A stretch of 64,000 nucleotides of DNA, from assembly GCA_950097015.1 (NCBI GenBank), contig CATNEN010000025.1, positions 2,294,001 to 2,358,000 of the forward strand, written 5' to 3'. Positions 396 to 61,062 of the stretch are shown one piece after another. The translations under genes were made by a program, and so were the position numbers. The notes under the pieces were generated by a model. It worked only from the letters and a program-made list of their open reading frames with translations, did not search any database and was not told the origin of the DNA. Every line of letters begins with the position of its first letter. Position 1 is the first letter of the stretch. The DNA is from Macrostomum hystrix (taxonomy: Eukaryota > Animalia > Platyhelminthes).

Positions 396-429
396 CATCT
401 TCAATCGTTGTCTATGAGACAAGACTCAC

Positions 430-1069
430 CTGTGAGCACAAGTCGCACCTCGCCTTCTGCTAAATCTAGCGGCGTCCGACCATCGTTGTTGTGCGCTGTC
501 GGATCGGCTTTGCGCTGAAGCAGCAGCAGGCAGGCCTCCAGCTTGCCCTTGGCCGCAGCCTCGTGCAACGGCGTGTAGCCCCAGTTGTCCTTCAGGTTCG
601 GATCGGCGCCTGAGTCCAACAGTAGGAGCACAACATCGCAGTGGCCGAAGGAGCAGGCATTGTGCAGCGGCACCAATCCGCCCTCGTCGCGGGCATTGAC
701 CGGGGCGCCGCTCTGCAACAGCGCGGCAGCCACTTCGTGCCTACCGAAACCGGCGGCAAAGTGAAGCGGCGTGCTACCCTGGCCGTTGGGATCGCGCAAT
801 AAGGTGCTCTGGTGAGCCAGGGCCAGCAGCCGCCTGACGCGAACTAGGTCGCCAGATCGGCAAGCCTCGAATAAATCAGTCGATGACGCGACGTCTGGTG
901 CTGGCGTGGACGGTGCAGAAGTAGGCAGCAGCTGCTGCTGGAGCTGAGGCAACGTTAGTAGCGGACATGGAGACTCATTTAACAGCTCCAACGACGATTG
1001 CTGCTGCGGCGAGTGGGAATCGTTGCAGGGGGTGGCGCCACCCGATACAGTGCGCGCGCCACTAGGCAT
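430..1069 (-). CDS. TNKS: Tankyrase (PARP5), first coding exon with the first ankyrin-repeat cluster; gene continues beyond the left edge
   Basis: GSTPLHFAAGFGR...ARDEGGLVPLHNACSFGH...DNWGYTPLHEAAAKGK...DGRTPLDLA...VLTGE matches the tankyrase ARC1 sequence. Likely ATG at 1069 (MPSGA), acceptor TTTTTCTGCAG at 1088-1087, donor CAG|GTGAGT at 430/429. Confidence 0.9.
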
Positions 1070-4000
1070 GGCGCAGCACAAATGGGCTGCAGAAAAAAAT
1101 GAGATATTCTTTACCAATATGAATGAAAGCTGTATCTAATTTGGCACTAAAAGTGACCTCGAAATAGCAAAATAAGTATTAATCAGTTTTGTCACTCTTA
1201 GACAACAACTTAAATGTGCAATTTTAGAAGTTGAAATACATATCATTGCATTACATATTAGCTAGCTACCACAATAAAATAAGATAGAAACACTTGCCTA
1301 AATTTAAATCTTAGCTAATACAAAGTAACAGGCTTATAAATATCTATTTAAACTATAAAGTTTACTATAAAGAAAAGGCAAATTAAGTGTCTTAGTCTAC
1401 TTAACAAGTCAATTATTTATTTGCATTAAACACTAAACCCCCTTTACTAATACAAAAAAATCATGCATTGTCTTATATCAAAATGTTTTGACAATAAAGC
1501 AGCAATAAAGTTTTACTTATGACAAAAAACAAAAAATTGCTTGTAAATAAAAGCATTTCAAAGTAAAGCTATAAAGGTATTGCCTACAAAGCCCCTATTG
1601 GAATAAAGATAGAAAACTTGTGGACGTGTACTTGTACATGTACTTAAGAAAAAATGCAAGTCATTTTATCCAACTTTAGCATTGTAATGTGATGAAAATT
1701 CTAGCAGATACATAGAACTGTTTTGTTAATTCTAGCAGTTAGTTGTTATTTTATGGCCTATGCTTTCCTATGCACTTATTTTTTCCTGTAGAATCGATAG
1801 GAAAGCAGTACAAAATAAAAACACCAATGCTATGTATGCTGTGTAGCTACTTAGCACATACCAAACTGCACTTTACACAACTCCCAAAAAGGCACACTAG
1901 ACACAGCCAAGACTATCTGCAGATTGTCAACTTTTTTCTAATAAGGTCCAAAGCTATAAATACCCATACCAAAATGAAGAGCTACCCATTAGCAATTAAG
2001 CAATACATAATTAAACTACAAAGGCTCTAAAACAAGATGTACAAAGTATTGAGTCATTGAAAATTATATATATACAATTTTTTATACATAGTTCATTATC
2101 ATGAAGCAAGGATAGGATTTAAATTGCCCTACAAATTAACAAATTAGGTAACAGTCAATAAACAAAAAATATGTAAAAAATGTAGTATCCCTTGTATCTC
2201 TAAAGGTTGGAGAAAAAAAGAACTGGCACAATCCTATCATTATTGTGTCTGTAAATGGGGTATTTCTGGACATGAAGCTAAGCTGGACTAATTTTTCTTT
2301 ATGAATGCAGCTTTAAATCTTTTAGGTTTCGTAGACTAGACTACGCCTTAAATTGACTAAATGAACTAGATTCTCGACTACTAATCTACTATATTATACT
2401 TAATTTTAAACTGACTCACTTCCCTAGCACATCTTTAATTAAAAATGCTTAATGCAACAATGTATGTTGCATGTGTACAATTAAAATTAAGAATACACTC
2501 TTATTTTCATACGTACAAAAGTTAATTTACGTATTCGATTTAGCTTATTCAGAATTTCTGAATTCATTTTTATTTTGAATGCTCATTAATATTTTTCGCG
2601 ATTCCAGGAATATTTAGGAAATATTATAACAAACTGTAGACATATTCTACACATAAACCAACATGAATCAAAGTATTTAGTTGTTTTTCGTTCTAGTATT
2701 ATAAAAATTTGATAACCAACGATTTGATTTGATTTAATCTTTGAAAAAAAAGACCAACTCTAAGTCAAAAGCAAGTTCACTTGACTGCGATAGTGCAATG
2801 GTTGTTGAAGGCAATACTTTTCAGTAATTTAGGTAAACTTAGTTATTACTTAAATGTCAATTTATTTAATAACTCTCATTTAGTTAGGTTACGTCTTTTA
2901 GTGTCTATCACTGCGAATAATTGACTGGTGAGAAACGCTTGACCTGGGCGGGTTTCGTGACAGCGACTTTCTAGTTGCGAATAAATGCACAACCTATACA
3001 GTTATCAGGTTTAACATACAGATGTCACGAAATTGACCGTCGTTCATCCTTCCGTCTATCCATTTTCGTAATTAACATCCATCAATAGTTAAGACACCAC
3101 GCGACGTGGCGCAACTAACTATACTGAATTGTTGGACTCATTTTGATGTTACGAGATGTTTAGCCTCGTGTATAGAATTCCGGGTATTTTTAACTGCAGA
3201 CAGTCCACAACAAAGGAATAGGAGCATGGTGTGTTCGTTTTTATATGTAACGTACCCACCCAACCCATGCTTTTAGTTTTGTAGAACCGTTAAAAATTAT
3301 GCTAACTCCTTTCATTACTCCAACATTGAAATTGAAATCATTGAAAACAAGGTTTCAGTAAGAAAGCGGAATGACATTTTTTCAATTGGAGATAGAGTAC
3401 GAACAAACGAAACTCGCTGATTTTGTCCATACAACTGAAATACAGTGGATTTTTACAGCATTCCTTAACGAACTGTTGCTGAATTTAGTATTTTACAAAT
3501 TCTATTTTTTCCAGTCCAAGCATGGATTGTGGACAATGGGATTGTGGACAGTGGAAACAAAAGATGGGCAGATTTTTTGTACACGGAAATCTTTTTACAA
3601 TAAAAGATCGCCTTTGCGGTGTAAGTAGTAAACTGTAGCTTTATAATACTAATGTCAATTATTTACTAGAGAGTAATTTTACTGTATCAAAAGTCCAGAA
3701 ACAAAGTGCCAAATGGTGTATTAGTGGGTGCAGTGGAACTAGGAAAAGCAAGCGAGATATGCTTGCGAAAATCGAATCATAGCAAAGTTTAGATCAGAGG
3801 CTAAAAGGTGAATGAGGCATCGATAGCGCCCGTATCGATTAATATCGCGCATACTGAACACAAACGCACACAAGCACATGCACACCAATGAGAGGGCGAT
3901 ATTTTTTATAATATTGCACACCTAATGAAGAAGGGTAAACCTGTAGTTTTTTATTTTAATTAGCGTTATGCTACAATATGTCCGGTAATATTGTAATAAA

Positions 4001-4355
4001 GCTAGCAATGTTCTTTACCTTTTTATAAGCTAACGCCAATTTATATTAAAAAGGGCTTCTACACTACGATGCAGGAAAATTCTTAATAATGTCAGGCTTT
4101 GCTAACAATGAGCAAAATAAATTTTAAGCCCAACTAAAATAAATGTAAGAGACGACAGAACTATTACGAGGTGGGATTTTAAATTTAACAAGAAACAGCA
4201 TAAAAAGAGAATTGAGAGAACTCGCATTTGTTGTCACTTTTCCAAAGTGATAATCTTCGTTAATACAACGAATAATCGAATAGAATGTTTTAATGGAAAA
4301 AGTTCATCAAACAGCTGATTGAAAATATCGTTTGATAAGACAACCCGGCTGTGCG

Positions 4356-7084
4356 TTAGGCTGTAGCGGCGGAAGCTTCAGCAGCAGCTGCCGTTGAAGG
4401 TGGTGCAACTTCGCCAAAAGTCGCGTCTGCGTTGATTTCTTGTAGCTGGTGCCGAGGTCGCTTTTCGCTAGGTGGTGCCGAATCGCACGAGTTGCTCTCG
4501 GCGCCGCTATCTGCAGCGCCATCGTTGTCGGCATCAGGCCGCCGTTTTGTCGGTCCGATGCGCTCCGACAAAGGCGACGCCGCAGCATCAGTAGTACCGC
4601 CGGCATCGTCCCCAACACCGCCATTCACAGTGGCTGTCTGATCGTCAGCGACATCTGAGACCTCATCTGGCGGCGGGACTTCTTCTGGCGACGCGTCAGG
4701 CTCAGATGACTCGGCAGGTCCGTCGGCAGTCGGAATCCTTCGCGGTTGCTGCAACTTTCTACCGCATTTTTCACGCCGTCTGCGCGCTTCTAACAGTTCA
4801 AGAATGGCGGCTGGCTTGCCACCACCGCTAGCACTGCCGGTAGCAGTTGGCGCAGCAGATGCGGGAACCTCAGGTTGATCCGACTGCTTGCCAGCCGCTA
4901 CTTTATTCTCGGATTCAATGCTGCTATTATTATTCTTATTATTGTTCTCAGCGTCGTCGTCATCGTCGTCACTCAGAACGACCACCATTTCTGGCACAAC
5001 CTGCGCCGGCTGACTAGGACGCGACACGGACGTTGCCTGACGCTGCTGCGATTGGCGCTGCTGCGATTGCTGGACAACCTGGGCATGCGAATGGTAGCGC
5101 GACACAACCGGCACTGACGACTGAATCAATTGCTGGGTCGGCCCGGCGGATCTGGTTTGCGAAGTATGCAGGCCCGACTGCTGCATTTGCCGATCTGCTG
5201 TTGCGCCAACCGAGGATCCGGTCAAATCGATGACAGACGAATCGACAGCGCCAAACCTGGCGCCAGTCCTGTTGCCAGTCTTGCGCATCATATGCTTGTC
5301 CTCCTCGGCTATGAGGCTGCGTAGCTTACCCAAACGTAGGAATAGGTGCATTCTGTAGGCGCTCTTGAAGCGCGCTACAACCTGGGTCTTGTCCGCAAGA
5401 GTGGACGCACCATTGAAGTCCTGCATGAAGCGACTGTACTGGCGCATCATGCCCTGCAGCAGTGAGACTGTGGCGTTTAGTGCCGTGCCGATGCTACGCA
5501 CATCAACCGACTCAATGTCGGCCAGAATGTTCTCAATGCGCACATTCTGCTTATACCATTGCTCGGTGCGCTGGGTTACACTGGCTTGATTACCCATCAC
5601 AGCTACGCCGGGCGCGACATGTTGCTGCTGCTGCTGCTGCTGCTGCAACTGTCGGCGCTGCTGAAGTTGCAACTGCTGCAACTGTTGCCGATTTTGCTGC
5701 AAATTCGGCTGGTTCTGCTGCTGTACCAGCTGACGGTGAGGCTGCAGCGGCTGTTGAACCGATGGCGCCCGGCTAGTAATCTTTGGCACGGCGCTCAAAT
5801 CAAGCTGCATGCCACCAATGGAAGCACTGTTAGACAAGCCCACGCCGCCGCGAACACTGCTGTAGGCGATGGTGGGTGTCGCAGCGGCTACTAGAACTGG
5901 TCCGGGCCGGATCTGTTGCAGCTGAGGAAGCGGCAGCGGCTGCAGTTGCGGCTGCGCTTGCATTACCGGAGTTGAAATCGGCGCGGCGACGGCCTTCTTT
6001 GCTTGAGCAACTTTATGCTTCTCGGAGCGCTTGTTGACCTCCTGGAGTAAGCCGAATAAAAAAGTTAATACTTTTTAAATTAATTTCTTTATTCTGTAAT
6101 GGTGCAAATAGTATTATAATCAAATAAAATAACTATTGCCAGAGTACTGGAAACGCAATATACCTGAAAGTGATCCTTGACAGCCTTGATGACAATCGTA
6201 GCCTCCTCCTGCAGATGCCGCAGAGAGCTTTGATCGCAGGCAAAACAAAGCCAAACAGAATCGTCCGGTAAGCTTTCAATTTCTTGCAGAGCGCTTCTAC
6301 CTAGATTGCGCTTGATGCAGGTGCGACAAAACGAATGCTCGCAATTATCGCAGCAGATCAGCGAGCCGCCCTCGCCGCACCAGCGGCACTGGTTCTCCTT
6401 GCCCTGCTCGTCCGAGTCGAAATGACCGGAGGCGTAGAATTTGTAGCACTTGTGGCAAACCAGCACCTTCAGCAGCGGATGGACCTGCGTGACAAGATGG
6501 AGAACATTAAAGTTTGCAAGTGTAATTAGTTTGTGATTCGCTCTGGATTATCATGCCCTCTAGTATGCGTGGCTTCAATCTCTCCTCACTTATCTTACCT
6601 CCGCGAAGCCAATAAAATGCTTTATAGGCTTCTTTACTGTTCCTAGCCAATATAGACTACTTGCGTCTACTGATATCATATCAATCTTTGAAATACAAAA
6701 ATAAGCAGTGCTACTTACATCCATAGTGCCGTTGTAGGGATTAACTTTTTTTCCGCAGGCCGTACATTTCACAGTGTCATAGATTCCAGGCGCGGAGCAT
6801 CTGGCGGCGCCAGATGAGGCCTGGTCGAAGCAGCCGACGTGGCCGCTGTCGCCAGTTTCGGTGACCGCTTCCGGCTGCACAACAACAGTGCCATCTTCGA
6901 GCTGCTGTTGGCCTTGGCCATTAATAATCGTGGCCGCGGTGATAATAGACATTATTGGAGTGTCCGACGGAGGGCCAGATTCCGGCGACTGGGGCATAAC
7001 AATAGATAATCCGTTAGCCGAAGGTTGTCCTTCATCGTCGCTATCGTTGGCTACGCGGCGGATAGCGCTTTGCTTGGTTCGCAT
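4356..7084 (-). CDS. ATRX-type ADD-domain protein, 790 aa, 3 exons, no helicase domain
   Basis: Exons 7084-6719, 6484-6164 and 6041-4356, all GT-AG and phase 0. Splicing rebuilds CTACGKKVNPYNGTMDVHPLLKVLVCHKCYKFY...QCRWCGEGGSLICCDNCEHSFCRTCIKRNLGR...WLCFAC, the GATA-like plus PHD-like ADD fold of ATRX. The rest is Q-rich/disordered and ends at TAA 4358-4356. Confidence 0.88.
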
Positions 7085-10000
7085 GATTAACTACTTCTGA
7101 GTAAGATGAGCTGCGTTCACTTATCGCTGCAGGTTATCGCTAATGTTATCTTTGGCTCCAATCGTTTTTGCACAGTCTAGTCGTTTACGGATTCTCCTTT
7201 TAGCGAGGTTGGTTGCTGCAAAATAAGGCAGGCGTGAAACACTGCCGACTATGACACACTCAACTTGGTTAAATAGAAGACTCGGCGTAAATGTACAACA
7301 GGGGAAGAGGAACGGTGGCTGTGCTTGTGATTGGACAAAAATAATTGAGGTGGGCTAGTAGAAAAAATGCAGAAGCAAATGACAGGGAAGACCGCGTTTG
7401 GTTACTGAAGAATTGAGGGTGGAAAAATATAGAGATTTTTGCGCGGGCCACAGTGGTAAGAGGGGACAGGAAAGGAAAACCTCTCCAGTGTTCAGTAGAA
7501 TAGCAAGCAAGCACAGAAAGCCTGCCCCTTTTCTACCCCCCACTATCTTTTGCGAAGGTTATGGGGGCAGTCCCACCCACTCATGCCTACCCTAGCTTGG
7601 TCATGTGACTTGCAACCTGCAAGCCCACCCCACACGGAGCGCGAGAAGCGCTTGCACACTGTACATTTTTAACTCTCTCCCCTTATTCAAGTCAGCGCGA
7701 CACATTCATTCCCTCTTCAAGCGCCCTTTCGTCCTAAACGTTCCGGACCAGTCAAAACCAATGAATGTACATCGCACACGCGCTGATCACGCGCTAATCA
7801 CGCGCTGATCACGCGCTGGCCGTGTGATAGAGAGACAGATTGGACGCCTAGAAGGCCGAACGGAGGGAAAGACAGAAAGAGTGGGTTTAAGATTGGTAAA
7901 GAGCTAGGGTTTTACGCACAGGGTTTATACGCAGGTCCACCCCAGCCGGAAAAAACCGGTTTTGTATTCGGAGCAGCAAGCAATCCAATCCAATCCAATC
8001 CAGCAATCCAAGCAATAAGGGAAATAAACGTCAAAGAAAGTGTACTATGTACTTCATACATACAACGAATAAAGCCAAAAAATACGCGGTAAAAATGATA
8101 TGTAATTATTTTTTTCGCATAAATTAGGAAGGGCGGTAAATTATGACGCACTTTTTAGCTATCGAAATCCAAGAAACCAGTAATGAGTTTTTTTGTTACC
8201 AAGTTATGCCTAATATAGAAAAATGCTTACATGGTCCGTATAAAATAATAACTAAAATATAGGCGAAAGTGAGCTTGTCGATAGTTACTTTGTAATTGAA
8301 AAATAAAACCACATGCTAATCAAAATCTAATAAAACTAGTCCGTACTCACTTTAGATTTTGAGAAGACAACCTGGGACGGGGAGAAGATCAATACAAATA
8401 TTTCTGCAACTACAACTTACCTGCAAAAAACTTAGTTTTCGAGTACTTCATACGATTCGCAGGTCCAAGATATGGAAGTTTGGATGCTGAAAGACTAGAT
8501 CAGTTGCTTAACTTGATTGCCTTGCTATGCCCGTACAAACAAAGATTCAGAAATCCCGAAGTCATGCTGAACTATTTACTACTCGCTCTAAATTGGTATT
8601 GCTAATTAACCCTAAATACATATCTCAGACCTAATAATTTAAACTAAGTTTTTAGGGAAAAGTAAAAGAAAAAAACGAAGATATTAAAATTGCAAGACAT
8701 CTCTTCCAAGGACACAATCACACAATGGTCCTTGTTCCACGAGCGTTTATCTACATAAAACACAGACAGATAAGAGAGACGGAACAGAAGTAGGGTGGCT
8801 TAATGTTTTTCTCGGTCCCTCACTCTAACAGTCAATACGCTAGCACATTTGGTTCGTTTGTTGCCGAGCGCGGTTCTGAGTCCTGACAAGGCGACAGAAA
8901 CTGCCAAGTTTCTAACTAATCCTTCAAAATAATTCAGCTTGAAAAATCGAATAAAGAGAAAGGTGTTTTAGCTATCGAGTACGTAAGTAACGCGATGCGA
9001 CTGACTGATGTCGGTATTGAAAGCATGCGCAACAGATAGCAAAAATCAGGACTAGCGCTCGACTCTCACTTTGGTGTTAAAGGGCACGCTGATCAACCAA
9101 ATCGATTTGCCCACCAGGAAAGGGATACGGCGGCTTAAAAAGCTTAAACAATGGTTAGAGCAAAACAAAAAGAAAATCAGAGAGAAAGATATACAAAGTA
9201 ATTTTTATCACATTCACGCTCGATAAGAAGCTGAGCGCTGATAAAAAAAACCACGACCTAATGAAATACGGGCAAAGAGAGAAGCTTTACAAGCCTTTCA
9301 AAATCGTTTATAGTGATAACTAACTTTAAATATATACACAGAGACACACAAACAATACAAGAATACAGCCAGCTCAAAGATAAGCCAATAGATAGGTCAA
9401 GCAAGGTGTGCACTACTACTAACTCTTATTAGAAGGAGTTTTCTTATATATTTGGGTTAATCAAAAATTTATATAAAGAATTAATTGAATCTTTTTAATT
9501 ACTTAAGGCTGACGTTTACAGGTAACTTCCCAGGGCGAAAAAAATAAATATCAGCAAATGTAAAAAGTCCATGAAAAAAACTATTATAAGCCGACTCGGA
9601 CAGGACCATTGAAGTGAATAACTAACTAATTTGCACAAGAGAAGATTCTACACACTATCATATACAGGCAAACACTGGCGAGAAAATCAGACACCCAACT
9701 ACTTAATCATCAGAAGCAATGAATGAATAAATGAAAATAAATAGTTATATTATTGATGAAAACCACGGTGATACCTAAAGCTGTTTGCATTGACTTGGAC
9801 TTGATTCTGCTGCACACTCAAGAAGTCAGGTGACGCATAGATGATCACGCGATCATGATTTAGAAGGCCAGATAACAAGACCCTATATGAATTTGAACCA
9901 TCATGCAAGCAATAGATGATAAGTATTTGAGTTAATTGTCCCCTTTATGACCAACAGTGCACATTTAGTTTTAAGAAAGCCATTATCAGATCTTAATTAT

Positions 10001-10803
10001 TGCAAATCCTGCTTTCAGGTTATCTAAAAACTGTTTTGTGATTATTCCTGGATCCCGAGATTATTATTATGATTAAGCTGCAATGAAATTATCATTGTGC
10101 TAGTTCGTCTGGTTCTTTGCAAAAAAGGGGCATTGGTTGCCTGCTGGGGGGACATTGGCTGCCTGCTTTTGTAAATAATTTGTTAAAACGTACCACATTG
10201 TTACAACGTCAAGGTCCAAATTATATGCTGCCGTTCAAAAGTTTGCAAATGAGGTCTATTGGTGATGCCTTCAATGGGCTGAAAATAGGAAGCCTTGGCA
10301 GCGCTTAAAAGTGCAATCGATTGTCCCCTAAATATATTTGGTTGGATCTCCACCCCAACGGGGGAGTTAGGTGCTAATTACCAAATACATTAACCGCTTG
10401 TGATGACCCTACAATGAAATGATTTTGCTTGATGAAAGAAAATCTAAAATGTAAGGCCTGGAAAGCATTAGTAGAAAAAATGAAGATGTTTTCATTATTA
10501 AATCAAAACATGCAAGCACTAAAAATATCTGTTTTGATTGCCTGAATAAGCATTTCTTATCTAATCAAAGAATGTCTTTTGGGGGAGGCAAAAATGTACT
10601 TCTCATGTACGTTTTAACTCGTACAATAATACAACTAAACGATCCATCAAATGTCCCAAGATCTTTAGCGAAGTTAAGTGAGATGTATTCACCACCTGAA
10701 AATAAAGAAACACAAAGAGTATAGTAATGACATTATTTTAATTTTGACATAAATTTTTGGGTACGTAATTCATCACTCGGGGCATTGCTAATTTCTTGAC
10801 TTT

Positions 10804-12410
10804 CTACGACGGTTGCTCCTGCGGTTGCGGCTGCTGCTGCTGCTGCTGATCTAGGTTAATCCTGTGCACGTGAATCTGACCAGTCTGCCTGGGTGGCCTC
10901 TGCGACCAAGAGGCGAAGAAGGCGGCAAAGAACAGTAGCGTGACGGCACCCAAAGCCATTGTGGACATGAAGTTAAAGTAGGCCTTATAGCAGACTCGGC
11001 AGTACCAGATGATACCTAGAATGCCGCCAAACAATGGAAACATGTAGCTACCAATGTCGCCCTGGCCTTCAAGGGGTCCGCCGGATTCGCCATCGGCCGC
11101 AGCGCCGACTCCAGCAGCGGCACCACCGGCATCATCGGCACTTGGACTTCGTTCAGTGATAAGGCAGTGAATTGTGGCCTCCTCTGGTATAGCATAGCTA
11201 GCCAAAGTGCAGTTGACACCCTCTTTCAGTTCCCGACCATTGTAGATTAAGCGAATGTTCATATTGCGCGATAGCTCCACTTGGAAGTGCTTGCTGGATT
11301 GGTTGTTAAGTAAGGTTAAGTATGAAGTTAGCAACATTAATGCGTGTAAATACAAATGGCAACTAAATAACCTTGCTAAACGCAACGACATGTTTTTGTT
11401 TCAAAAACTGTTGAAAAAGACATTAATTCCTCTTTTCATCGCAAAACACATGCACTAAGGAGCTGAACAAACCGTTTGAAATTCGCGATAGACTCAGTTG
11501 GCAAAGCGACGACAGTTCGCAGGTCGTCATTGAAGTATTTTAATCGGAGCAATAGACTACCCGGCGGCCGACTCGATGAGACGGCTGGAGTCGCAGCCAC
11601 AGGCGGAGGGGCTGATGCCGATGAGTCGGTAACGACAGTAACGGTAGCGGACGTTGGCGCCGAAGCTTCGACAACGGAAGAAGTGGCTTCAGTGTCGCCT
11701 ACGCTGCTAGGGGCAAAGCCAGCGGCGGTGCCAGATGAAGAAGTTGATGCAGTGCTCACTCCGGCAGACGTATCTGAACCACCTGCATTTGGCTGGGCCA
11801 GCAAACAATTGAAGTACTTCAGTCGACGATTGCGCAATTCAGAATCGTTCTTAGCCTCCATGACTTGGGTGTACTCGTTCAGTACATCTTCGACGCGTTC
11901 GCGCATCTCCTGATCGAGATCGCCGTCCGATTCCAACACGTCGACATCGTAGGCGGCCAAGTCACCAGGCGAAGCGGAGGTGGCACCAGCTGCAGTGGCG
12001 GCAACCGTTGTATCTACAGCGTCTACTACACTGGGAGCAGGGTTGGCAGGCGTTATGGGCGTCTCCGTGACAGCATCCGGCGTTGAAATGACGCCGGTAG
12101 AAGCGTCACCTGATGACGACGGAACAGGAGCAGGACCGACCAACACAGGTGGCACTACAGGAGCAACTAATGGCTGCTGCTGCTGTGGCGGCTGCACTTC
12201 GCCAGGCCTGTTGCGACCAAAATTTTCAAACACAAAGACCGCTATCGGTCGCATATCCTGTGGCACGTAGGTGGACAGCCAGGCCGCAACCAGAATGAGG
12301 CCGGCCAGCAGAATGAATACGCATACAACAACTTCGGAGCCGATGCCTTCTAGTAGGCTGCCGCCGACTGCTGACGCTATTGTGGCTGGAGCCCCGGCCG
12401 GGTCTGACAT
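10804..12410 (-). CDS. TMUB: Transmembrane and ubiquitin-like domain protein (TMUB1/2-like), 2 exons, about 475 aa
   Basis: Exons 12410-11473 and 11293-10804 (phase 2). N-terminal LEGIGSEVVV...LVAAWLSTYV TM segment, UBL domain (LRLKYFNDD...IRLIYNGRELK...TIHCLI) and two C-terminal TM helices (FPLFGGILGIIWY..., MALGAVTLLFF). Confidence 0.85.
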
Positions 12411-26254: not shown

Positions 26255-28555
26255 ATGTCTAGTAAATCAGAATCTGAGCACTCTCTTTCTACTAATTACT
26301 CAGCCTACTCTTGTCAGGCGATTTCTTCTCCCTCAAATAGTTTTTCTACAAGTAATAGGAGTTCAATTTCAAGCGAAGCCGGTGTAACGCACTCGCACAG
26401 CTGTCCTGACGCTGTGGAAACTTTTATTGGTGAAAACAATGCTGTGCCTGTGCTTGAGGAGAGTTCAGATAGCTTAGCGAATTTGGCTTCCATCTCAGAT
26501 CCCAGTGTGCAGGCGGCTCTGATTTTTCAGTGGGCAATTACTTCCGGAGTTTCAGAGGCTGCTCTTGATAGACTCCTGAAGCTACTTTCTATTTTTAGTA
26601 GAGATTCTCTAGCTCTTCCAAATAGCGTCAAGTTGCTCAAATCATTGATTCAAGATACTTGCCCTCTTGATGATAGTGACGTGTCTGAATTTGGCTTTTG
26701 CCCAGAATGCAAAAGCCAGTGTCAGGTTCATTCCCCAAAGTCAAAGGTTGCTGTGACACAGCTCAATATTGTTCCACAGCTGCGGACTATCTTAAGCAGC
26801 CACACTTCAACTATTCTGCAGTATGAGCAAGAATTGCAAAAGGATAAAAACACAGACGTTTTGAATTCCAAAATAGTTAAAGAACAAGGCTTAAGCCTAT
26901 CTTCTGGCAAGTCGCTTCACTTGCATCTTCTAATCTCAGCTGATGGCGCCAATTTTTTTGAATCTGTTCAGAGTAGCTTTTGGCCATTTCAGGCTCAACT
27001 TCTAAACCTTCCTGTTTACATCCGTCAACGCTTTGCAAATTTAATTCTAATTGCTCTTGTTTCATCGAAGGCAGTCCCGCATTTCCAGTCTTTTCTGTCT
27101 GAAATTATGAACAATTTGCCAAAACAGTTTATATTCTCGGAATACACCGTTCATGTCCATTACACACTCTTTGTTTGTGACTTGCCCGCTCTTGCTAAGC
27201 TCTTCTGCATTCACCAGTACAATGGTGCGTTTAGCTGTCCTAGGTGCTTGCACCCAGGTGAGAGCTTTAAAGTATCCGAGAAAGGTAAAAACTGGATCTT
27301 CCGCTATGGTGAAGGCTACTTGTTTCCTTTGAGAAACCCATCTTCCCATCTTGAACACTGTCGGCTCGCACAAATTCGAAATCGGCCTGTTTTTGGCGTA
27401 AAGATGCGCAGTTGCTTGTTAGACTATGTTCCGTTTCCCAGCTGCAATCCTATTGACAGTTTACACTGCTTTTTCGAAGGCCACACCAAGTATCTACTAG
27501 AAGAGCTGTCATTACCTGCAAACAGGCGCGAGTTGTATTTTTGCTCAGCTAATTGCATGGATTTCATATCTAATTGTATTCGTCAATCTATAACTCCTTC
27601 TAGCATCACAATCAACACAAATTTTAAAGGCTTTTCAGATTGGAAAGCAAAGCATTTTAAAAACTTTGCGCTATACTTTCTTCTTCCTACGTTTTTGCAG
27701 AGAATTTCGCATTTTCCATTGAAACTGCTGTTAACTAATTTAGTTCTTATTTATCACATGTTGTATAGCCCCCAATCAAATAAGACTGATATCGAAAAGC
27801 TATGCAAAGCTTTTATCTCCAATGCTCAGCAAATATTCGGACCGAAAGTACTCCGCCTTAATTTCCACCTGCTTTTGCATATGGCTGAACAGTACGAATT
27901 GTACGGACCTGTATTTAATTATTCTATGTTCGCATTTGAGAGCTCCATTGGCATGTTCAAAAAGTTCTTATGCGGAACTGTGTCATTTGGCCCACAGCTT
28001 GTTCGCAAGTTTTTGTTTCAAAAGTTGCTACATCACTACTTTTCTTGTGTTAAGGACTCTATTGTAGTGGATGCAGTTAACTCTATATCTTTAGAGCCAT
28101 CCAGGCCACATGGTATTCTTCGAAACTCACTTGCTTATTTTAATGGACATTTTTTCTCGACAAGCTCAGCTTGTGCGTCGAAAAATTCTAACCATCTTTG
28201 CCAATTGAAGTCCGGCGAAATCTGCACTATTGCAGAGTTCCTCGAGCCTAATACTATTCGAGTGCAAATTTTGGATCCCATTGGTTCGCTGTTTGATTTT
28301 GTTTTACGAGTACCAGCAGCAACTTTCCCCATCGATTTACTTAATTGGAAAGCATTGCTGGAATCCATGTTCAAAAAGTCTTCGACATTCAATTTTGTAT
28401 TGATATCCCTGTCTAATGCGCCCAGATCGGCCAGACGCGAACGTATAGTTAATTTTTCAGAGGTCGATCGACCCTGCATCGCTGTTCCAGTAGAATCGTT
28501 CAGCAAAGACTGTTATTGCGCTGTGCCATTGTTCAAAGAGTTTGAACATGATTAA
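26255..28555 (+). CDS. CMC/EnSpm-type DDE transposase, 766 aa, uninterrupted
   Basis: Motifs ISADGANF...WP...LNLP (D1), CDLPA (D2), YNGAFSCPRC (C2C), DSLH, WKAKHF, HLLLH (H3H) and YGP...SMFAFES (E) are the signature set of CMC transposases. Confidence 0.92.
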   Translation: MSSKSESEHSLSTNYSAYSCQAISSPSNSFSTSNRSSISSEAGVTHSHSCPDAVETFIGENNAVPVLEESSDSLANLASISDPSVQAALIFQWAITSGVSEAALDRLLKLLSIFSRDSLALPNSVKLLKSLIQDTCPLDDSDVSEFGFCPECKSQCQVHSPKSKVAVTQLNIVPQLRTILSSHTSTILQYEQELQKDKNTDVLNSKIVKEQGLSLSSGKSLHLHLLISADGANFFESVQSSFWPFQAQLLNLPVYIRQRFANLILIALVSSKAVPHFQSFLSEIMNNLPKQFIFSEYTVHVHYTLFVCDLPALAKLFCIHQYNGAFSCPRCLHPGESFKVSEKGKNWIFRYGEGYLFPLRNPSSHLEHCRLAQIRNRPVFGVKMRSCLLDYVPFPSCNPIDSLHCFFEGHTKYLLEELSLPANRRELYFCSANCMDFISNCIRQSITPSSITINTNFKGFSDWKAKHFKNFALYFLLPTFLQRISHFPLKLLLTNLVLIYHMLYSPQSNKTDIEKLCKAFISNAQQIFGPKVLRLNFHLLLHMAEQYELYGPVFNYSMFAFESSIGMFKKFLCGTVSFGPQLVRKFLFQKLLHHYFSCVKDSIVVDAVNSISLEPSRPHGILRNSLAYFNGHFFSTSSACASKNSNHLCQLKSGEICTIAEFLEPNTIRVQILDPIGSLFDFVLRVPAATFPIDLLNWKALLESMFKKSSTFNFVLISLSNAPRSARRERIVNFSEVDRPCIAVPVESFSKDCYCAVPLFKEFEHD

Positions 28556-55944: not shown

Positions 55945-55976
55945 TCACGAAACTGCCACAGAGGATTGTTGCTGAA

Positions 55977-56013
<37 letters not shown>

Positions 56014-59000
56014 AGCCGCATCAGAGTAGAGGTAGACAACTAGAAGGCAGTCCTGGCACAGCTGCACCACCCTGCGGCAGCAGTTAATCTCAGTTTCTGT
56101 GGGGGCCTCACGTGACTGTCGAAGAATCACCTCCCAGCCGGCGCTGCCTGCGAACGTCTCCCACAGGCCCTGACCGTGGCACCACAGGAGGCGGTTGTAC
56201 AGCTTCTCAAATAGGCGCTCGAGGTTCTTAGCAGCGGCAGCCACATCCGAGGCTGTCATACGCAGCGCCTTATCGAGCGCTACGCGCACATTTCTTCTGG
56301 CGATGTCGAGCACTTTTTGTCGTTTGTCAGCGTCGAGGCTTAACCGCCAGTAGCCGCTCACATCGGCCTTTCTAGTGCGCCAGTTGTCCTGCAGCTGACG
56401 CAGCAGCTGATCGGCGCCACGGTTCGACTTACCCGGGAAGCGGATGCTCAACTCGTTAAGAAACTTCAGTGTTCTCAACGCAAGCTGCTCGCGTTCGTTC
56501 GCGCTAGTCAATTCTGAATGCTGTTTCTGCTGCTGCTGTAGCAGTTTCTGCTTTTTTAATGCCTTCTTTTTCGTATCATCCTTTGCAGCTAGCTTTTCTG
56601 CACCAGTTTTTGTCTCCAGCTGCTTTTTAAGACTCGCTGCACCAACCCCCACTCTACTCCGTCGAGCTGCAGCCTGTTCTTCGTCATCAGAATCGGATTC
56701 GCTGCTAGCAGCCTGGCCCTCGGCCATCAGCTGTTGAACAGTCTTGGAGCTGAGCTGGGCCAGCTTCTTGGCCACTTCGTCAGTTTTGCTAGTGTAGAAC
56801 GTTTTGAGCTCGCGTTGCAGCGCCTCCACTGGGCCGCCATCAACCAGGGCCGCGATGGCATCTAGCATCTGGGACACAAGTTTCTCCTGCTTCGCCGCGT
56901 CGTCAACTGGAAAGATGCGACGGAATCTCTGGCAGACCCGCCCGTCCGCCTCTTTCATGCGGTCCTGCAGCTTCAGTCGGGCCAGCAGTGCTGTGAGATC
57001 GGTCACCTCCTTCTGAGCCGACTTGACCGACCCGGGAGGACCTTCTGTTACCTGCGTTGCGGTCTTCCAGTCTGCTGGGCTGACGTTTAGTAGCATCAGC
57101 GTCTCTTCCAGTAGCTGCAGCTTCACTCCCTGCTCTCTGGTGTTCTCGTAGTCAAAGCTGGGCGATCTGTTGACTTCCATTAGCCAGGGCTTTAGTTCAG
57201 CATCGAGCAGGACGTCAAAACCCAGAAGCTCGAAGCAGACAGAGTTACTGCCTGGATGATCTGCAGGACGGCACTGCCGGTAAGAGCGGAGGATATGCGG
57301 ATAGGCGGCAAACACAGTCCTAACTATCAGGTCAACGATGTTCCGCCAGACTAACGCCACATCGTACTTGTGCTGTTGCAGGTAGTTGTTCAGAAACACC
57401 AGCGGGCGCTTCGTGCCACTAACTGTGGCGCCTTTGCGCCTGGAAGAGTCGTACTGATCATTCGGCCGATTCTGCTTGTTCACCGAGCAGTTTGTCAGGT
57501 GCATGAATGACAGTTCCTCATTCGCTTTGCACTTCTGCGGATCTAGGTAGGGCTCGGAGCTCATTCGGGTGAAGCCGTCGTTGAACAGATAAATTCGAAG
57601 TGGATCGCACGAGGTGATCAATACATAGAGCCGCAAATCAAACTTGACATTTTCGATGAGGAAAGGATTGGATACGTACTCTTGTAGGACGCATTCTCCT
57701 TCAAAAGTTTGCGGCACTTCATCCGCTGTCTTGTAGATCTTAATGCCGCGACCAGATGCGCCGTCCACGGGCTTGCAGATATAGGACGGCTTCACTTCAG
57801 ACTTCTGCTCCTGCACGTGCTGGCGAAACGTCGCGAGTTGATCAGGTAGGCACCAGGTACGCGGCGAGAATTTGTACTCACTTGGGTACCGTGCTGCTAG
57901 TTTATACATGTTCTTAGCTAAAAGATCTTTGCGACAGATTTCCACCATACCGGGAAAGTGATTGACCCTTTGAAACTGTTTCAGCTGAGTCAGACGCTCA
58001 GTAGAAATGAATGTATCATTCCAGATGAGAAAAGGCGTTTTAAAATCGTCTTTGGTTGTTTTTACAAAGTCGATATGCCTTGCAGCTTCTTCAACAACTG
58101 AATATCGAGTACCGCTGAGATTCGCTGGCAGGGGTCGGCTTAGTTTGATGATTCGCAGCTTTTGTAGCTCGAATCGATCAAATTCAAACTCAGCTAGACC
58201 TTTGGATGCACGCTTTGCTGAGAAGTCCTCTTCGCGTAATCCACGCTTCACAAATGGCCTCTCATCAGTTTCAGACAGCCTAGAAGACTTCGGCCTTTCT
58301 GCGATCATAGACCTCTGCTCGGCTGTTCTCGGCGGAGACAGATCCCGACCGGGTGACTGCTTGCGACGACCTGAAAGGGTCAAATCCTCTCTAGGAGGCA
58401 TTTTTGAGCCAGATTTTAAGTAGCTCGACTCCTTTTTAGCACTACTGTCATCCCGAAGAGCGCCGCGTCGAGGAGATAGTCGATTATCATCTTTGCTTGT
58501 GGGTCTTAGCGATAAGTCCCTGTCACTGTCTTTTCGACTATCAATTCTAGTGACGCCTCGCGGCGACAGGCCCTTTTCGTCTTCTTTTCTCTTGTCCAGG
58601 CCTTTTTTGCTATCATCGAGTGGCTTCTGACCCGCTCGTAACCTTTGCGGAGCAGAGTCGAAGTCCTTTGCTCTGCGCGGGGAGGTCTCACTTTTACTTA
58701 TGGTCTTAGATGGAGGTGAAAGGCTTCTCCCAGCTTTGCCGCTAAGCAAAGGACGATTGGCAGGCGCACGTTTATTCTCCTCGCTTTCGCTGTGGCTGTC
58801 TGAATCCGACGTGCGAAGACCGGCTGATTTCTTCTTTTCAAGCGGATCCTGTCTTGGTGAAGAACCGGGTCTGTTCAATACGCCAGCCTTTGGCTGCTCC
58901 TTGTCGCCTCGAAAGCTGGACTGTGAAACTCGTGTTTCTTTTGGAATGGAGCCTTCCTTTCGATCCAGGCCCGGTTTGTATCCAGATTTCGGCCTAAGAC

Positions 59001-61062
59001 CACTTTTCGGCACATCAGCTGTGACCTGATCAGGAGCTTCATCTCGACGTCGCGGCGACAGACCACTGCCTGACCTGTAGCCAGTCCTTGGAGAAGACTC
59101 TTTCTCTTTCTCAACTCGCAGCTCCTTTCGAGTAGACGGGTCATTTCTACGCCGCTGCAAATCATCGTCCCGTTTCTGGAGTGGAGAGTCGCTATAGCTA
59201 TTCTCAATCAAACCTTTTGAGCGCGAGAGAAGATTATCGCGCTGGCCGACCTTTGATGGTACTCGCTGCGCACTCGCACGACTCGGCGATAAATCTTTTC
59301 CTGATGAGGATTTTAAAGGCGGTGACGAGGCGCGACCAAGGTCATTTCGACGACGAATAGGAAGAACGTCGGACATTCTCGGAGGTGACTCTTCATCACT
59401 GTCATTGGGCCTCTTTGCGCGACGCAACAGAGAATCGTCTCTATCATCCGTCAATATCTTCTTACGGGCAAGAGGCTCTTCACGCGTCGCTCTTGGTGGA
59501 GGTGAGTCAGTGCGGCCCCTTAAGGGCTCCCTTCTGCGGTGCAGAGGCATTTCGTCTAGTTCGCCTCTACTCGCCAAATCTCTTCGACGATTAAATGACT
59601 CCTCTCGCGAAGTGGAACCAAGAGGTGGTGAACCACTTCTCAATTTGAGATCCCTTCTATTTCGAGATGGTAGGTCTTCAGCATCGCTGGTTCTGCTTGT
59701 AAATTCATTTCGACGAGTCAGCGATTCCGTACGCGATAAAGAATCGAGAGGTGGTGAGCCACTTCTAGAATTAAGATCTCTTCTCTTGCGCAATGGAAAA
59801 TCATCAGCATCGCTGGTCTTGCTTGTTAAGTCCTTTCGTCGACCAAGGGACAATGAGTCGGTTCTTTCGTCGGTTTCATATCTTCTCCGCATCTCATTTC
59901 GTGGGGAAAGCTTTGAAGGCGGTGACTGATCTCTTCCAGGTCCAGTCAAGCCTCCTCGAAACGGGCCTCGAGCAGCAGTTCTCGAACGAGGAGAATCACT
60001 ATCGACTTCAGCAGTTCGTCTATGACGCACTGGAATGTCATCATCAGCAATATCGCTTGTAGGCTCCTTTCTGCGGTTCAAAGGCTGTTCACGAGAGGAC
60101 GACCGAAGTCGTGAAGAGTCGTTTTCTGCATCCAGATCTTTGCGGCCACGAACAGGCGAATCTGCCCGTGATCCAATTTTGAGGGCTGCCCTAGGGGAGT
60201 TGCGGCGCAATGAGATATCAGCGTCACGAAGGGCTTCATCCGAAAATTTTCTGCGACGATTTGGAACTTCATCAAGATTCATGGACTTCTGTGGCGGAGA
60301 ATCATATTCAATGCTTTTGTTGCCGAGGTTACTTTGACGAGAGCGCAATGAGCTATCATCGTCACGAAGGCTCGATTGAAGCCTACTGCTGCGTTGGGAA
60401 AAATCTGCATCGCTCTTACCAGAGACAACCGGCCTCAGGTTTCGCGATGTGTCTGCTAGCCGGCTCCGTGCAGCATCCGAGTTATCAGAAGAAGACGCAT
60501 CATCTTTAACGCCAAGTCGCATGTTATCCGTGCTGTCATAGGGCCTACCAGGCTTTCCATTGGCAGCCGTCCGACGGCTGAATGAGCGGGTGCCTGCTGC
60601 GTCCTCATCGGCATCGCCAGCTCTGCCTCGGCTGTGAATTCCTTGAGAAGGCCGAGGCGACAGCTTCGAAGATCGCTCTGGGTCACGCGATGACGACTCA
60701 GCTGGTCGCGGTGATCCCGACCGCCGAGACGGGATGTCATGGTCATGGATGCTTCCACCGGGACGCAAGGAAGATCCAGCAGACGCTCTCGATCGGTAGG
60801 ATGTAAAGCTGCTGTTTTTGTCCACTTCTTCGTCGCTATCGCTATCTCGATTCAGTCGACTGCGAGTTCCGGTGCCAGTAGAGCCGCTGCGACTGCCGCC
60901 TGGTGCTGGATGCCTTTGGCCACTGCTGGTTGCTGGCTCAATAAGGCGGCTGCCTTCTGAGGACCTTGATGGGCTCTCAGAGATAGGCTTCAGGTCCTGA
61001 GCTGATGCCTTGTTCAGGTAGAGAGGCGCCATGGCGTCATAAAGTCGTGCAAAGCCTGCCAT
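55945..61062 (-). CDS. TTLL7: Tubulin polyglutamylase TTLL7-like, 1705 aa, intronless CDS
   Basis: TTL core: QRVNHFPGMVEICRKD, YICKP..GASGRGI, QEYVSNPFLI..KFDLRLYVL.TSCDPLRIYLF, HLTN, CFELLGFDVLLD..KPWLMEVNRSPSF. C-terminal LYNRLLWCHGQGLWE...CCRRVVQLCQDCLLVVY matches the TTLL7-specific tail. Confidence 0.88.

What the first reader, a model, noticed from the sequence alone, without database searches (positions are those of the whole stretch)
4356..7084. Stand-alone ATRX ADD-domain gene with no SNF2 helicase (dADD1-like split ATRX)
Seen: three exons splice to a complete ATRX-type ADD domain followed by about 560 aa of Q-rich/disordered sequence ending in TAA. The 3.2 kb to the tankyrase gene is AT-rich with no helicase-like ORF, and a minus-strand AATAAA lies at about 3955-3950. 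Known: vertebrate ATRX joins ADD and SNF2 in one protein, whereas Drosophila splits them into dADD1 and XNP. Inference: an independent ADD/helicase fission or an ADD-only paralogue in this lineage, i.e. a separate H3K9me3 reader.
Basis: partly seen in the sequence, partly recalled or inferred. Interest (0 to 1): 0.72.

Follow-up and report, generated by a model that had tools for sequence, protein, structure and literature searches.

The report
Flatworm ATRX split: stand-alone ADD gene
This flatworm (Macrostomum) gene makes only the histone-reading front part of the chromatin remodeller ATRX, and in the related M. lignano the motor part sits in a separate gene elsewhere, a split that probably arose independently of the known one in fruit flies.

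Summary
A three-exon minus-strand gene (ATG 7084, TAA 4358-4356; 122+107+561 codons) encodes a complete ATRX-type ADD domain and no helicase.

In three runs, one spliced RNA contig removes both introns exactly as predicted. It carries the Macrostomum spliced leader at 7216 and runs through a ~0.9 kb 3'UTR to 3438, so the main mRNA is ADD-only.

The window comes from a Macrostomum-type flatworm. M. lignano has the same gene, with the same introns and neighbours (ubiquitin-like gene, ADD gene, tankyrase).

The tail is not only disordered. It holds a ~95-residue helical domain under purifying selection as strong as on the ADD (dN/dS 0.03). I detected that domain only in flatworm ATRX proteins, including the full-length (ADD+SNF2) ATRX of flukes and tapeworms, directly after the ADD.

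M. lignano also has an ATRX-type SNF2 gene (1702 aa, no ADD) on another contig. No long macrostomid ADD protein turned up among 1.84 billion representatives.

Best reading: a lineage-specific ATRX fission, probably independent of insect dADD1/XNP. The ADD tree alone cannot prove independence.

H3K9me3 reading and re-association with the SNF2 half are inferred. I found no paper on this. It is a new member of a known kind, of moderate interest.

The parts
7216..7217 (-). Spliced-leader trans-splice acceptor (AG after a TTATTTTGCAG tract); the mRNA body starts at 7215/7216
   Evidence: contigs of X4, X5 and X6 each carry 21 loose letters at 7216. Their reverse complement, CGAAGACTCAATTTATTGCAT, is the 3' part of the 35-nt M. 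lignano SL (PMC8629364).
7085..7215 (-). 5'UTR (131 nt); the SL's terminal ATG opens a 13-codon uORF that stops before the main ATG
6719..7084 (-). Exon 1 CDS, 122 codons: conserved N-terminus (MRTKQ..IRR, LEDGTVVVQPEAV) and the first CxxC of the GATA-like finger
   Evidence: tblastn to Opisthorchis ATRX aa 1-107. dN/dS 0.07 against M. lignano.
6485..6718 (-). Intron 1 (234 nt, GT..AG, phase 0); same position in M. lignano
   Evidence: Joint
6164..6484 (-). Exon 2 CDS, 107 codons: rest of the GATA-like finger, the PHD finger and the C-terminal helix of the ADD
   Evidence: E 1e-25 to human ATRX ADD. 92% identical to M. lignano, dN/dS 0.027.
6167..6793 (-). ADD domain as a whole (exon 1 aa 98-122 plus exon 2 aa 1-106, interrupted by intron 1); all zinc-binding Cys pairs are present
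6042..6163 (-). Intron 2 (122 nt, GT..AG, phase 0); same position in M. lignano, where it is 1959 nt
4356..6041 (-). Exon 3 CDS, 561 codons plus TAA (4358-4356)
5292..5579 (-). Flatworm-specific ATRX helical domain (exon 3 aa 155-250; WYKQNV...RFKSAYRMHLFLRLGKLRSLIAEEDKH); predicted helices with a long hairpin
   Evidence: dN/dS 0.027. A profile finds it in 28 flatworm proteins, including full-length fluke and tapeworm ATRX, and in none of the non-flatworm proteins in the 281-protein set. AF2 pLDDT 78.5. No Pfam match.
5220..5234 (-). SUMO-interaction-like motif VIDLT
   Evidence: Motif conserved in window, P0001 and L003 (FIDLT); its function is inferred
4953..4985 (-). SUMO-interaction-like motif VVVLSDDDDDD (hydrophobic core plus acidic run)
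   Evidence: Conserved in window, P0001, P0004 and L003; its function is inferred
4431..4475 (-). Conserved basic C-terminal motif PPSEKRPRHQLQEIN (nuclear-localisation-like)
   Evidence: Alignment; its function is inferred
3438..4355 (-). 3'UTR (~918 nt); contigs of three runs all end at 3438; AATAAA at 3955-3950 lies inside it
   Evidence: contigs cannot prove a poly(A) site
401..1117 (-). Context: first coding exon of the downstream tankyrase-like gene (ankyrin repeats)
   Evidence: same neighbour in M. lignano

Best explanation
This is the ADD half of a split ATRX in a Macrostomum-type flatworm.

Shown:
- An expressed, spliced-leader trans-spliced, three-exon gene encodes 790 aa.
- The protein has a conserved N-terminus, a complete ATRX-type ADD domain, a flatworm-specific helical domain, and an acidic, Q-rich tail with two SUMO-interaction-like motifs. 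It ends in its own stop codon and 3'UTR.
- It is collinear with the first ~530 residues of the full-length ATRX of flukes and tapeworms.
- In M. lignano the ATRX-type SNF2 motor is a separate gene without an ADD, on another contig.

Inferred:
- An ancestral fused flatworm ATRX was split in the macrostomid lineage, and the two halves were relocated. This probably happened independently of the insect dADD1/XNP split.
- The ADD binds H3 tails carrying K9me3 with unmodified K4.
The pair would then do in trans what vertebrate ATRX does in one chain.
For: - Gene structure and domain.
- mRNA from SL to 3'UTR, with both introns removed and no further exon, in three runs. The SL sequence is matched to PMC8629364.
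- M. lignano orthologue P0001 (758 aa, ADD only) has the same intron positions and the same neighbours.
- Purifying selection: dN/dS 0.027 on the ADD exon and on the helical domain, 0.15-0.27 elsewhere, with dS saturated.
- A third ADD-only copy lies on a metagenome contig and has its own stop codon.
- The nearest non-macrostomid relatives are full-length fluke and tapeworm ATRX with ADD+SNF2+Helicase_C. These carry the helical domain right after the ADD.
- tblastn finds only aa 1-530 of those proteins in the window and in the M. lignano ADD loci.
- M. lignano P0192 is 1702 aa with SNF2+Helicase_C and no ADD. It is 54% identical to schistosome ATRX in the motor domain. It lies on a 691 kb contig between unrelated genes. 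There is no ADD anywhere in the 28 kb locus (10 kb flanks each side), and a stop codon lies upstream of its first ATG.
- P0001 and P0192 align to complementary parts of Opisthorchis ATRX: aa 60-528 against aa 1107-1937.
- Zinc ligands, H189 and an aromatic residue at the Y203 position are kept (PMC12900699).
- In Drosophila the post-ADD region of dADD1 binds XNP (PMC4249797).
Against: - The SNF2 half was found in M. lignano, not in this genome, which I could not search.
- The P0192 model is flagged 5'-partial.
- The ADD tree on 107 columns does not reject a clade of macrostomid plus insect ADD-only proteins (AU p 0.416). The flatworm grouping is only weakly supported (74/47).
- E252, which matters for H3K9me3 binding in human ATRX, is Ala here, and the acidic loop is only partly kept.
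- The planarian Dugesia XNP also lacks an ADD. The split may therefore be older or repeated within flatworms, and the fused fluke models were not checked against RNA.
- No binding or interaction was tested.
Confidence: 0.75

Rival explanations
1. This is an ADD-only paralogue made by partial duplication, like teleost atrxl, while a full-length ADD+SNF2 ATRX is kept elsewhere in the macrostomid genome.
For: ADD-only paralogues do exist beside full-length ATRX in teleosts (P0034 is nested in teleost ATRX). M. lignano has two ADD-only paralogue groups, P0001 and P0004, so the ADD half has been duplicated. P0192 is a 5'-partial model.
Against: No long ADD-bearing macrostomid protein appears among the best hits of a search of 1.84 billion representatives; every long hit is from another group. 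The M. lignano ATRX-type SNF2 gene has no ADD anywhere in the 28 kb locus fetched (10 kb flanks each side), and an in-frame stop lies upstream of its first ATG. P0004 also ends in a stop with no SNF2 in the 4.8 kb downstream.
Confidence: 0.12
2. This is a member of one ancient ADD-only lineage shared with insect dADD1, arising from a single old fission or duplication before protostomes diverged.
For: The AU test does not reject macrostomid plus insect ADD-only proteins as one clade (p 0.416). There is one faint local similarity, QRTELWYKQNV against QRTKVWFDTSI in Chrysoperla (E 0.018).
Against: The helical domain after the ADD is shared with full-length fluke and tapeworm ATRX but not with insect ADD-only proteins or any non-flatworm ATRX in the set. 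Insects form their own clade (100/99), and macrostomids group, weakly, with flukes and tapeworms. ATRX is fused in molluscs, Lingula, Owenia, Tubulanus and a millipede.
Confidence: 0.05
3. This is an assembly or annotation artefact: a full-length ATRX broken or misjoined here, with SNF2 exons lost or lying further downstream.
For: None was found. The idea rests only on the general risk that tapeworm models are sometimes split in two.
Against: RNA contigs from three runs start with the SL and end in a 3'UTR. The stop codon and the tankyrase neighbour are conserved in two M. lignano contigs. No helicase similarity occurs in the whole 64 kb window.
Confidence: 0.02

Closest known systems
Drosophila dADD1 (CG8290) with XNP/dATRX
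   Same: The ATRX ADD domain sits in its own protein, the SNF2 motor is a separate ADD-less gene, and the ADD is followed by a non-helicase region. In dADD1, aa 355-625 bind XNP (PMC4249797).
   Different: The phylum differs and the origin is probably separate. There are no MADF or THAP domains. The gene carries a flatworm-specific helical domain and SIM-like motifs, and its mRNA is SL trans-spliced.
Full-length ATRX of flukes and tapeworms (e.g. Opisthorchis felineus TGZ66706.1, Schistosoma mansoni A0A3Q0KQB0, Echinococcus canadensis A0A915EWX5)
   Same: The N-terminus, ADD and helical domain occur in the same order. These are the closest ADD sequences outside macrostomids, about 46-55% identical.
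   Different: Those proteins continue into SNF2 and Helicase_C (about 1900-2200 aa). This one stops after 790 aa, and they lack its SIM-like motifs.
Human ATRX ADD domain (PDB 2JM1, 3QL9)
   Same: The GATA-like plus PHD zinc-finger fold is shared (E 1e-25). All Cys ligands, H189, Y204 and Q219 are kept, and the Y203 position stays aromatic (F).
   Different: E252 is Ala, and the acidic loop 207-218 is only partly conserved. The domain is not joined to a helicase.
Teleost atrxl (ATRX-like, ADD-only paralogue)
   Same: It is an ADD-bearing protein of about 800-950 aa without a helicase.
   Different: It is a vertebrate-specific duplicate that coexists with full-length ATRX and nests in teleost ATRX in the tree. 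Here the SNF2 gene has lost the ADD.
Macrostomum lignano BOX15_Mlig023686g3 (P0001) and BOX15_Mlig031735g2 (P0004)
   Same: P0001 is the orthologue: same exons and neighbours, 92% identical in the ADD. P0004 is a paralogue with the same architecture.
   Different: Both are deposited only as hypothetical, 'PHD-type domain-containing' or 'DNA helicase' proteins. I found no paper that describes them.

Membership tests
ATRX-type ADD domain (Pfam PF17981 plus PHD) | Sequence match above the curated threshold | tested here: met
   Exon 2 scores 32.6 bits against a cut-off of 25.7. The exon 1 end supplies profile positions 10-24. Human ATRX ADD matches at E 1e-25.
ATRX-type ADD domain (Pfam PF17981 plus PHD) | GATA-like C4 finger and PHD-finger zinc ligands | tested here: met
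   CTAC and CHKC; CRWC, CCDNC, FCRTC and LCFAC all align to the human ligands.
ATRX-type ADD domain (Pfam PF17981 plus PHD) | Residues of the H3K9me3/K4me0 binding surface (H189, Y203, acidic loop, E252; PMC12900699) | tested here: inconclusive
   H189 is kept, Y203 is F, Y204 and Q219 are kept, about 4 acidic residues remain in the loop, and E252 is A.
ATRX-type ADD domain (Pfam PF17981 plus PHD) | Binding of H3K9me3/K4me0 peptides | not testable with these tools
   This needs a peptide pull-down or ITC.
ATRX/XNP SNF2 remodeller (one-chain ATRX) | SNF2-related and Helicase_C domains in the same polypeptide | tested here: not met
   There is no Pfam hit in exon 3. The mRNA ends at 3438 without further exons. 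There is no helicase similarity in the window.
Flatworm ATRX N-terminal module | Helical domain (..SF.S.YR.HLF.RL..) directly after the ADD | tested here: met
   The profile matches 28 flatworm proteins and none of the non-flatworm proteins in the 281-protein set. tblastn aligns P0011 aa 397-472 to window 5528..5301.
Insect dADD1 orthogroup | Common descent with the insect ADD-only clade | tested here: inconclusive
   The clades are separate in the tree (insects 100/99, macrostomids 96/92), but AU p is 0.416 for joining them. The helical domain is absent from the insect proteins.
Insect dADD1 orthogroup | Accessory MADF (Drosophila) or THAP (Chrysoperla) domains | tested here: not met
   There is no such Pfam hit in any exon.
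Insect dADD1 orthogroup | Partner SNF2 gene that lacks an ADD | tested here: met
   M. lignano P0192. This was shown in the sister species only.
Insect dADD1 orthogroup | Physical interaction with XNP and HP1a | not testable with these tools
   This needs co-IP or pull-down.

The most novel reading that the evidence does not exclude
ATRX has been split at least twice in animals, in insects and in macrostomid flatworms, and perhaps also in planarians. In flatworms the conserved helical domain, which sits next to the ADD in fused fluke ATRX, would be the tether that re-assembles reader and motor in trans. That would give a second natural split-ATRX system, in a regenerating, transgenic-ready model animal.
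Probability: 0.3. Interest if true: 0.6.

Novelty: new member of a known kind. Interest (0 to 1): 0.45.

Why it matters
ATRX mutations in people cluster in the ADD or in the helicase domain. Until now, Drosophila has been the only animal described in which the two functions are naturally separated.

A second and probably independent split, in a different phylum, makes two points.

Macrostomum can be studied with RNAi and transgenesis.

The result also warns that database names such as 'DNA helicase' for these ADD-only proteins are wrong.

Tried and rejected
- The ESM Atlas feature search of the helical domain gave no usable hit.
- Foldseek against PDB and VIA-align wide on two AF2 models gave only generic helical-hairpin matches, with best Z 8.3, below the level that is meaningful for helices. 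No fold assignment was made.
- The word search with the ADD region is blind to long proteins and gave only 7 hits.
- Notes of this scan contain nothing on ATRX or SNF2 in this genome.
- Pfam on the four intergenic ORFs gave nothing.
- The ADD-only tree could not decide on independence from insects.
- The AATAAA at 3955 was rejected as the main 3' end, because the contigs run on to 3438.
- Runs X1-X3 hold only small unspliced pieces and were not informative.
- Step left out: the joined 790-aa spliced model was never assembled, searched or folded as one sequence. Exons were used by reference, and the M. lignano orthologue P0001 served as the full-length proxy.

Full report
**What is in the sequence**

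On the minus strand, an ATG at 7084 opens exon 1 (7084..6719, 122 codons). A GTAAGT..CAG intron (6718..6485) leads to exon 2 (6484..6164, 107 codons). A GTATAT..CAG intron (6163..6042) leads to exon 3 (6041..4356, 561 codons ending in TAA).

The Pfam ADD_ATRX profile is split across the end of exon 1 and the start of exon 2, followed by a PHD finger. Exon 2 alone matches the solved human ATRX ADD domain at E 1e-25, well ahead of AIRE, CHD4 and DNMT3L/3A. All zinc-binding cysteine pairs are present.

**Expression and transcript ends**

Four public runs were laid on 1350..7349. In each of three small runs from one study (X4-X6), a single contig covers 3438..7216, with both introns removed at exactly the predicted sites.

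At 7216 each contig carries 21 further letters. Their reverse complement, CGAAGACTCAATTTATTGCAT, is the 3' part of the 35-nt Macrostomum lignano spliced leader (PMC8629364). The genomic site is a TTATTTTGCAG acceptor. These contigs are therefore RNA-derived.

The mature mRNA runs from the spliced leader through a 131-nt 5'UTR, the 790-codon ORF and a roughly 918-nt 3'UTR. All three contigs stop at 3438, although contigs cannot prove a poly(A) site. No contig splices from exon 3 to anything else.

**No hidden helicase**

The interval down to the tankyrase-like exon (401..1117) has 29-40% G+C, only small ORFs and no Pfam match. That exon's ankyrin repeats give their best long collinear match to tankyrase-1.

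tblastn with four full-length ATRX proteins against the whole 64 kb window finds only their residues 1-530, all within this gene.

**Whose gene it is**

- The closest proteins are from the flatworm Macrostomum lignano. P0001 is 758 aa and ADD-only.
- P0001 lies on two contigs in the order kinase, ubiquitin-like gene, ADD gene, tankyrase-like gene. That order matches the window, where the ubiquitin-like gene is at 10804..12410 and the tankyrase-like gene at 401..1117.
- Both intron positions are the same.
- Synonymous sites are saturated (dS 1.7-2.5), so this is another Macrostomum-type species, not M. lignano.
- dN/dS is 0.027 for the ADD exon and 0.15-0.27 for the tails.
- A second M. lignano paralogue (P0004) and a copy on a metagenome contig (P0006 plus the next ORF of L003) have the same build and their own stop codons.

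**The tail is not just disorder**

Exon 3 residues 155-250 (5579..5292) form a block with dN/dS 0.027. The block is predicted as helices with a long hairpin (pLDDT 78.5). It has no Pfam family and no informative structural match.

A profile of this block finds it in 28 proteins, all from flatworms, and in none of the other ADD or ATRX proteins collected.

Two SUMO-interaction-like motifs (VIDLT and VVVLSDDDDDD) are conserved among the macrostomid-type proteins only. Their function is inferred.

**Relation to full-length ATRX**

An exhaustive profile search of 1.84 billion representatives placed two kinds of hit just after the macrostomid proteins: Nematostella, and the full-length ATRX of flukes and tapeworms. 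The flatworm examples are Opisthorchis, Paragonimus, Calicophoron, Heterobilharzia and Echinococcus canadensis. They carry ADD, SNF2 and Helicase_C, with the helical block directly after the ADD. The window's protein is thus collinear with the first ~530 residues of a fused flatworm ATRX.

No long macrostomid-like ADD protein appeared in that search.

**The other half**

A word search with a schistosome-relative SNF2 domain found M. lignano BOX15_Mlig008142g2 (P0192).

- It is 1702 aa, with SNF2 and Helicase_C and no ADD.
- It scores among mollusc ATRX proteins.
- It lies on a 691 kb contig between unrelated genes.
- Nothing ADD-like occurs anywhere in the 28 kb locus (10 kb flanks each side), and an in-frame stop lies upstream of its first ATG.
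- P0001 aligns to Opisthorchis ATRX residues 60-528, and P0192 to residues 1107-1937. The two are complementary and do not overlap.

This is the pattern expected of a gene fission followed by relocation. By contrast, in Echinococcus multilocularis the ADD and SNF2 models are adjacent, 760 bp apart on one strand, and are fused in other tapeworm models.

**Independence from the insect split**

ATRX is fused in molluscs, Lingula, Owenia, Tubulanus, a millipede, echinoderms, amphioxus and vertebrates. The insect fission is described in PMC4249797.

In an ADD tree the clades resolve as follows:

| Grouping | Support |
|---|---|
| Macrostomid ADD-only proteins | 96/92 |
| Flukes and tapeworms | 99/93 |
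| Insect ADD-only proteins | 100/99 |
| Teleost atrxl nested in teleost ATRX | 99/86 |
| Macrostomids with flukes and tapeworms | 74/47 |

The grouping of macrostomids with flukes and tapeworms is weak. An AU test does not reject macrostomids plus insects as one clade (p 0.416). The argument for independence therefore rests on the flatworm-only helical domain and on the taxonomic distribution of fused ATRX, not on the tree.

**How it probably works**

By homology, the ADD reads the H3 tail (K9me3 with unmodified K4). H189, Y204 and Q219 are kept and the Y203 position is Phe. However, E252 is Ala and the acidic loop is only partly kept. Binding is likely but not shown.

In Drosophila, the post-ADD part of dADD1 binds the N-terminus of XNP. 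This is inference.

**Novelty and limits**

The M. lignano proteins are in databases only as hypothetical, 'PHD-type' or, wrongly, 'DNA helicase' entries. I found no paper on ATRX in Macrostomum or on an ATRX fission outside insects.

Three limits apply:

- The SNF2 half was seen only in the sister species, and its model is 5'-partial.
- The planarian Dugesia XNP also lacks an ADD, so the age and number of splits within flatworms are open.

**Verdict**

This is a new member of a known kind (split ATRX), of moderate interest.

Noticed in passing
L006 (Echinococcus multilocularis LN902841.1) 10001-11918 and 12678 onwards: The ADD-half model (518 aa) and the SNF2-half model (1502 aa) are adjacent on one strand, 760 bp apart. 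E. canadensis and Hymenolepis models fuse them, so the 'split' tapeworm ATRX models are probably one gene cut in two by annotation.
   Followed up: partly
P0242 (Dugesia japonica XNP, Q868M6) and P0005: The planarian XNP (1076 aa, starts with Met, SNF2 at 201-920) has no ADD. P0005 is an N/K/I-rich protein with an ADD and the flatworm helical domain, and could be an ADD half from such a lineage. The ATRX split may extend beyond macrostomids.
   Followed up: no
window 7085-7216 (-): The spliced leader ends in ATG. On this mRNA that ATG opens a 13-codon upstream ORF (MQPTSLKGESVND*) ahead of the main start codon.
   Followed up: partly
P0002, P0003 (M. lignano UniProt isoforms of the orthologue): These shorter isoforms have internal deletions in exon 3 that remove the Q-rich stretch and the first half of the helical domain. 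No such joint was seen in the window's RNA contigs.
   Followed up: no
window 26255-28555 (+): A 766-aa ORF with DUF1258 and DUF4218 (transposase-associated), lying inside the element that earlier notes call a CMC/EnSpm transposon.
   Followed up: no
window 55945-61062 (-): A single 1705-aa ORF with a tubulin-tyrosine-ligase-family domain at residues 1029-1328 and a long N-terminal region with no Pfam match.
   Followed up: no
window 10804-12410 (-): A two-exon ubiquitin-like-domain gene upstream of the ADD gene. The same neighbour (516-517 aa) is present in M. lignano, so the block ubiquitin-like gene, ADD gene, tankyrase is conserved.
   Followed up: partly
P0192 (M. lignano SNF2 half), around residues 678 and 1236: The SNF2 half carries SIM-like motifs (VVLLDDSDSDD, TIDLTGD) that resemble those in the ADD half. 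Lingula ATRX has IIDLSDSD in the insert between the two motor lobes.
   Followed up: no
P0034 / P0277 (Paramormyrops 'ATRX-like') and P0050 (Apostichopus 'Atrxl'): ADD-bearing, helicase-less ATRX-like proteins also exist in teleosts, where they nest within teleost ATRX in the ADD tree. A sea cucumber model is also named this way. ADD-only derivatives therefore seem to arise repeatedly.
   Followed up: partly
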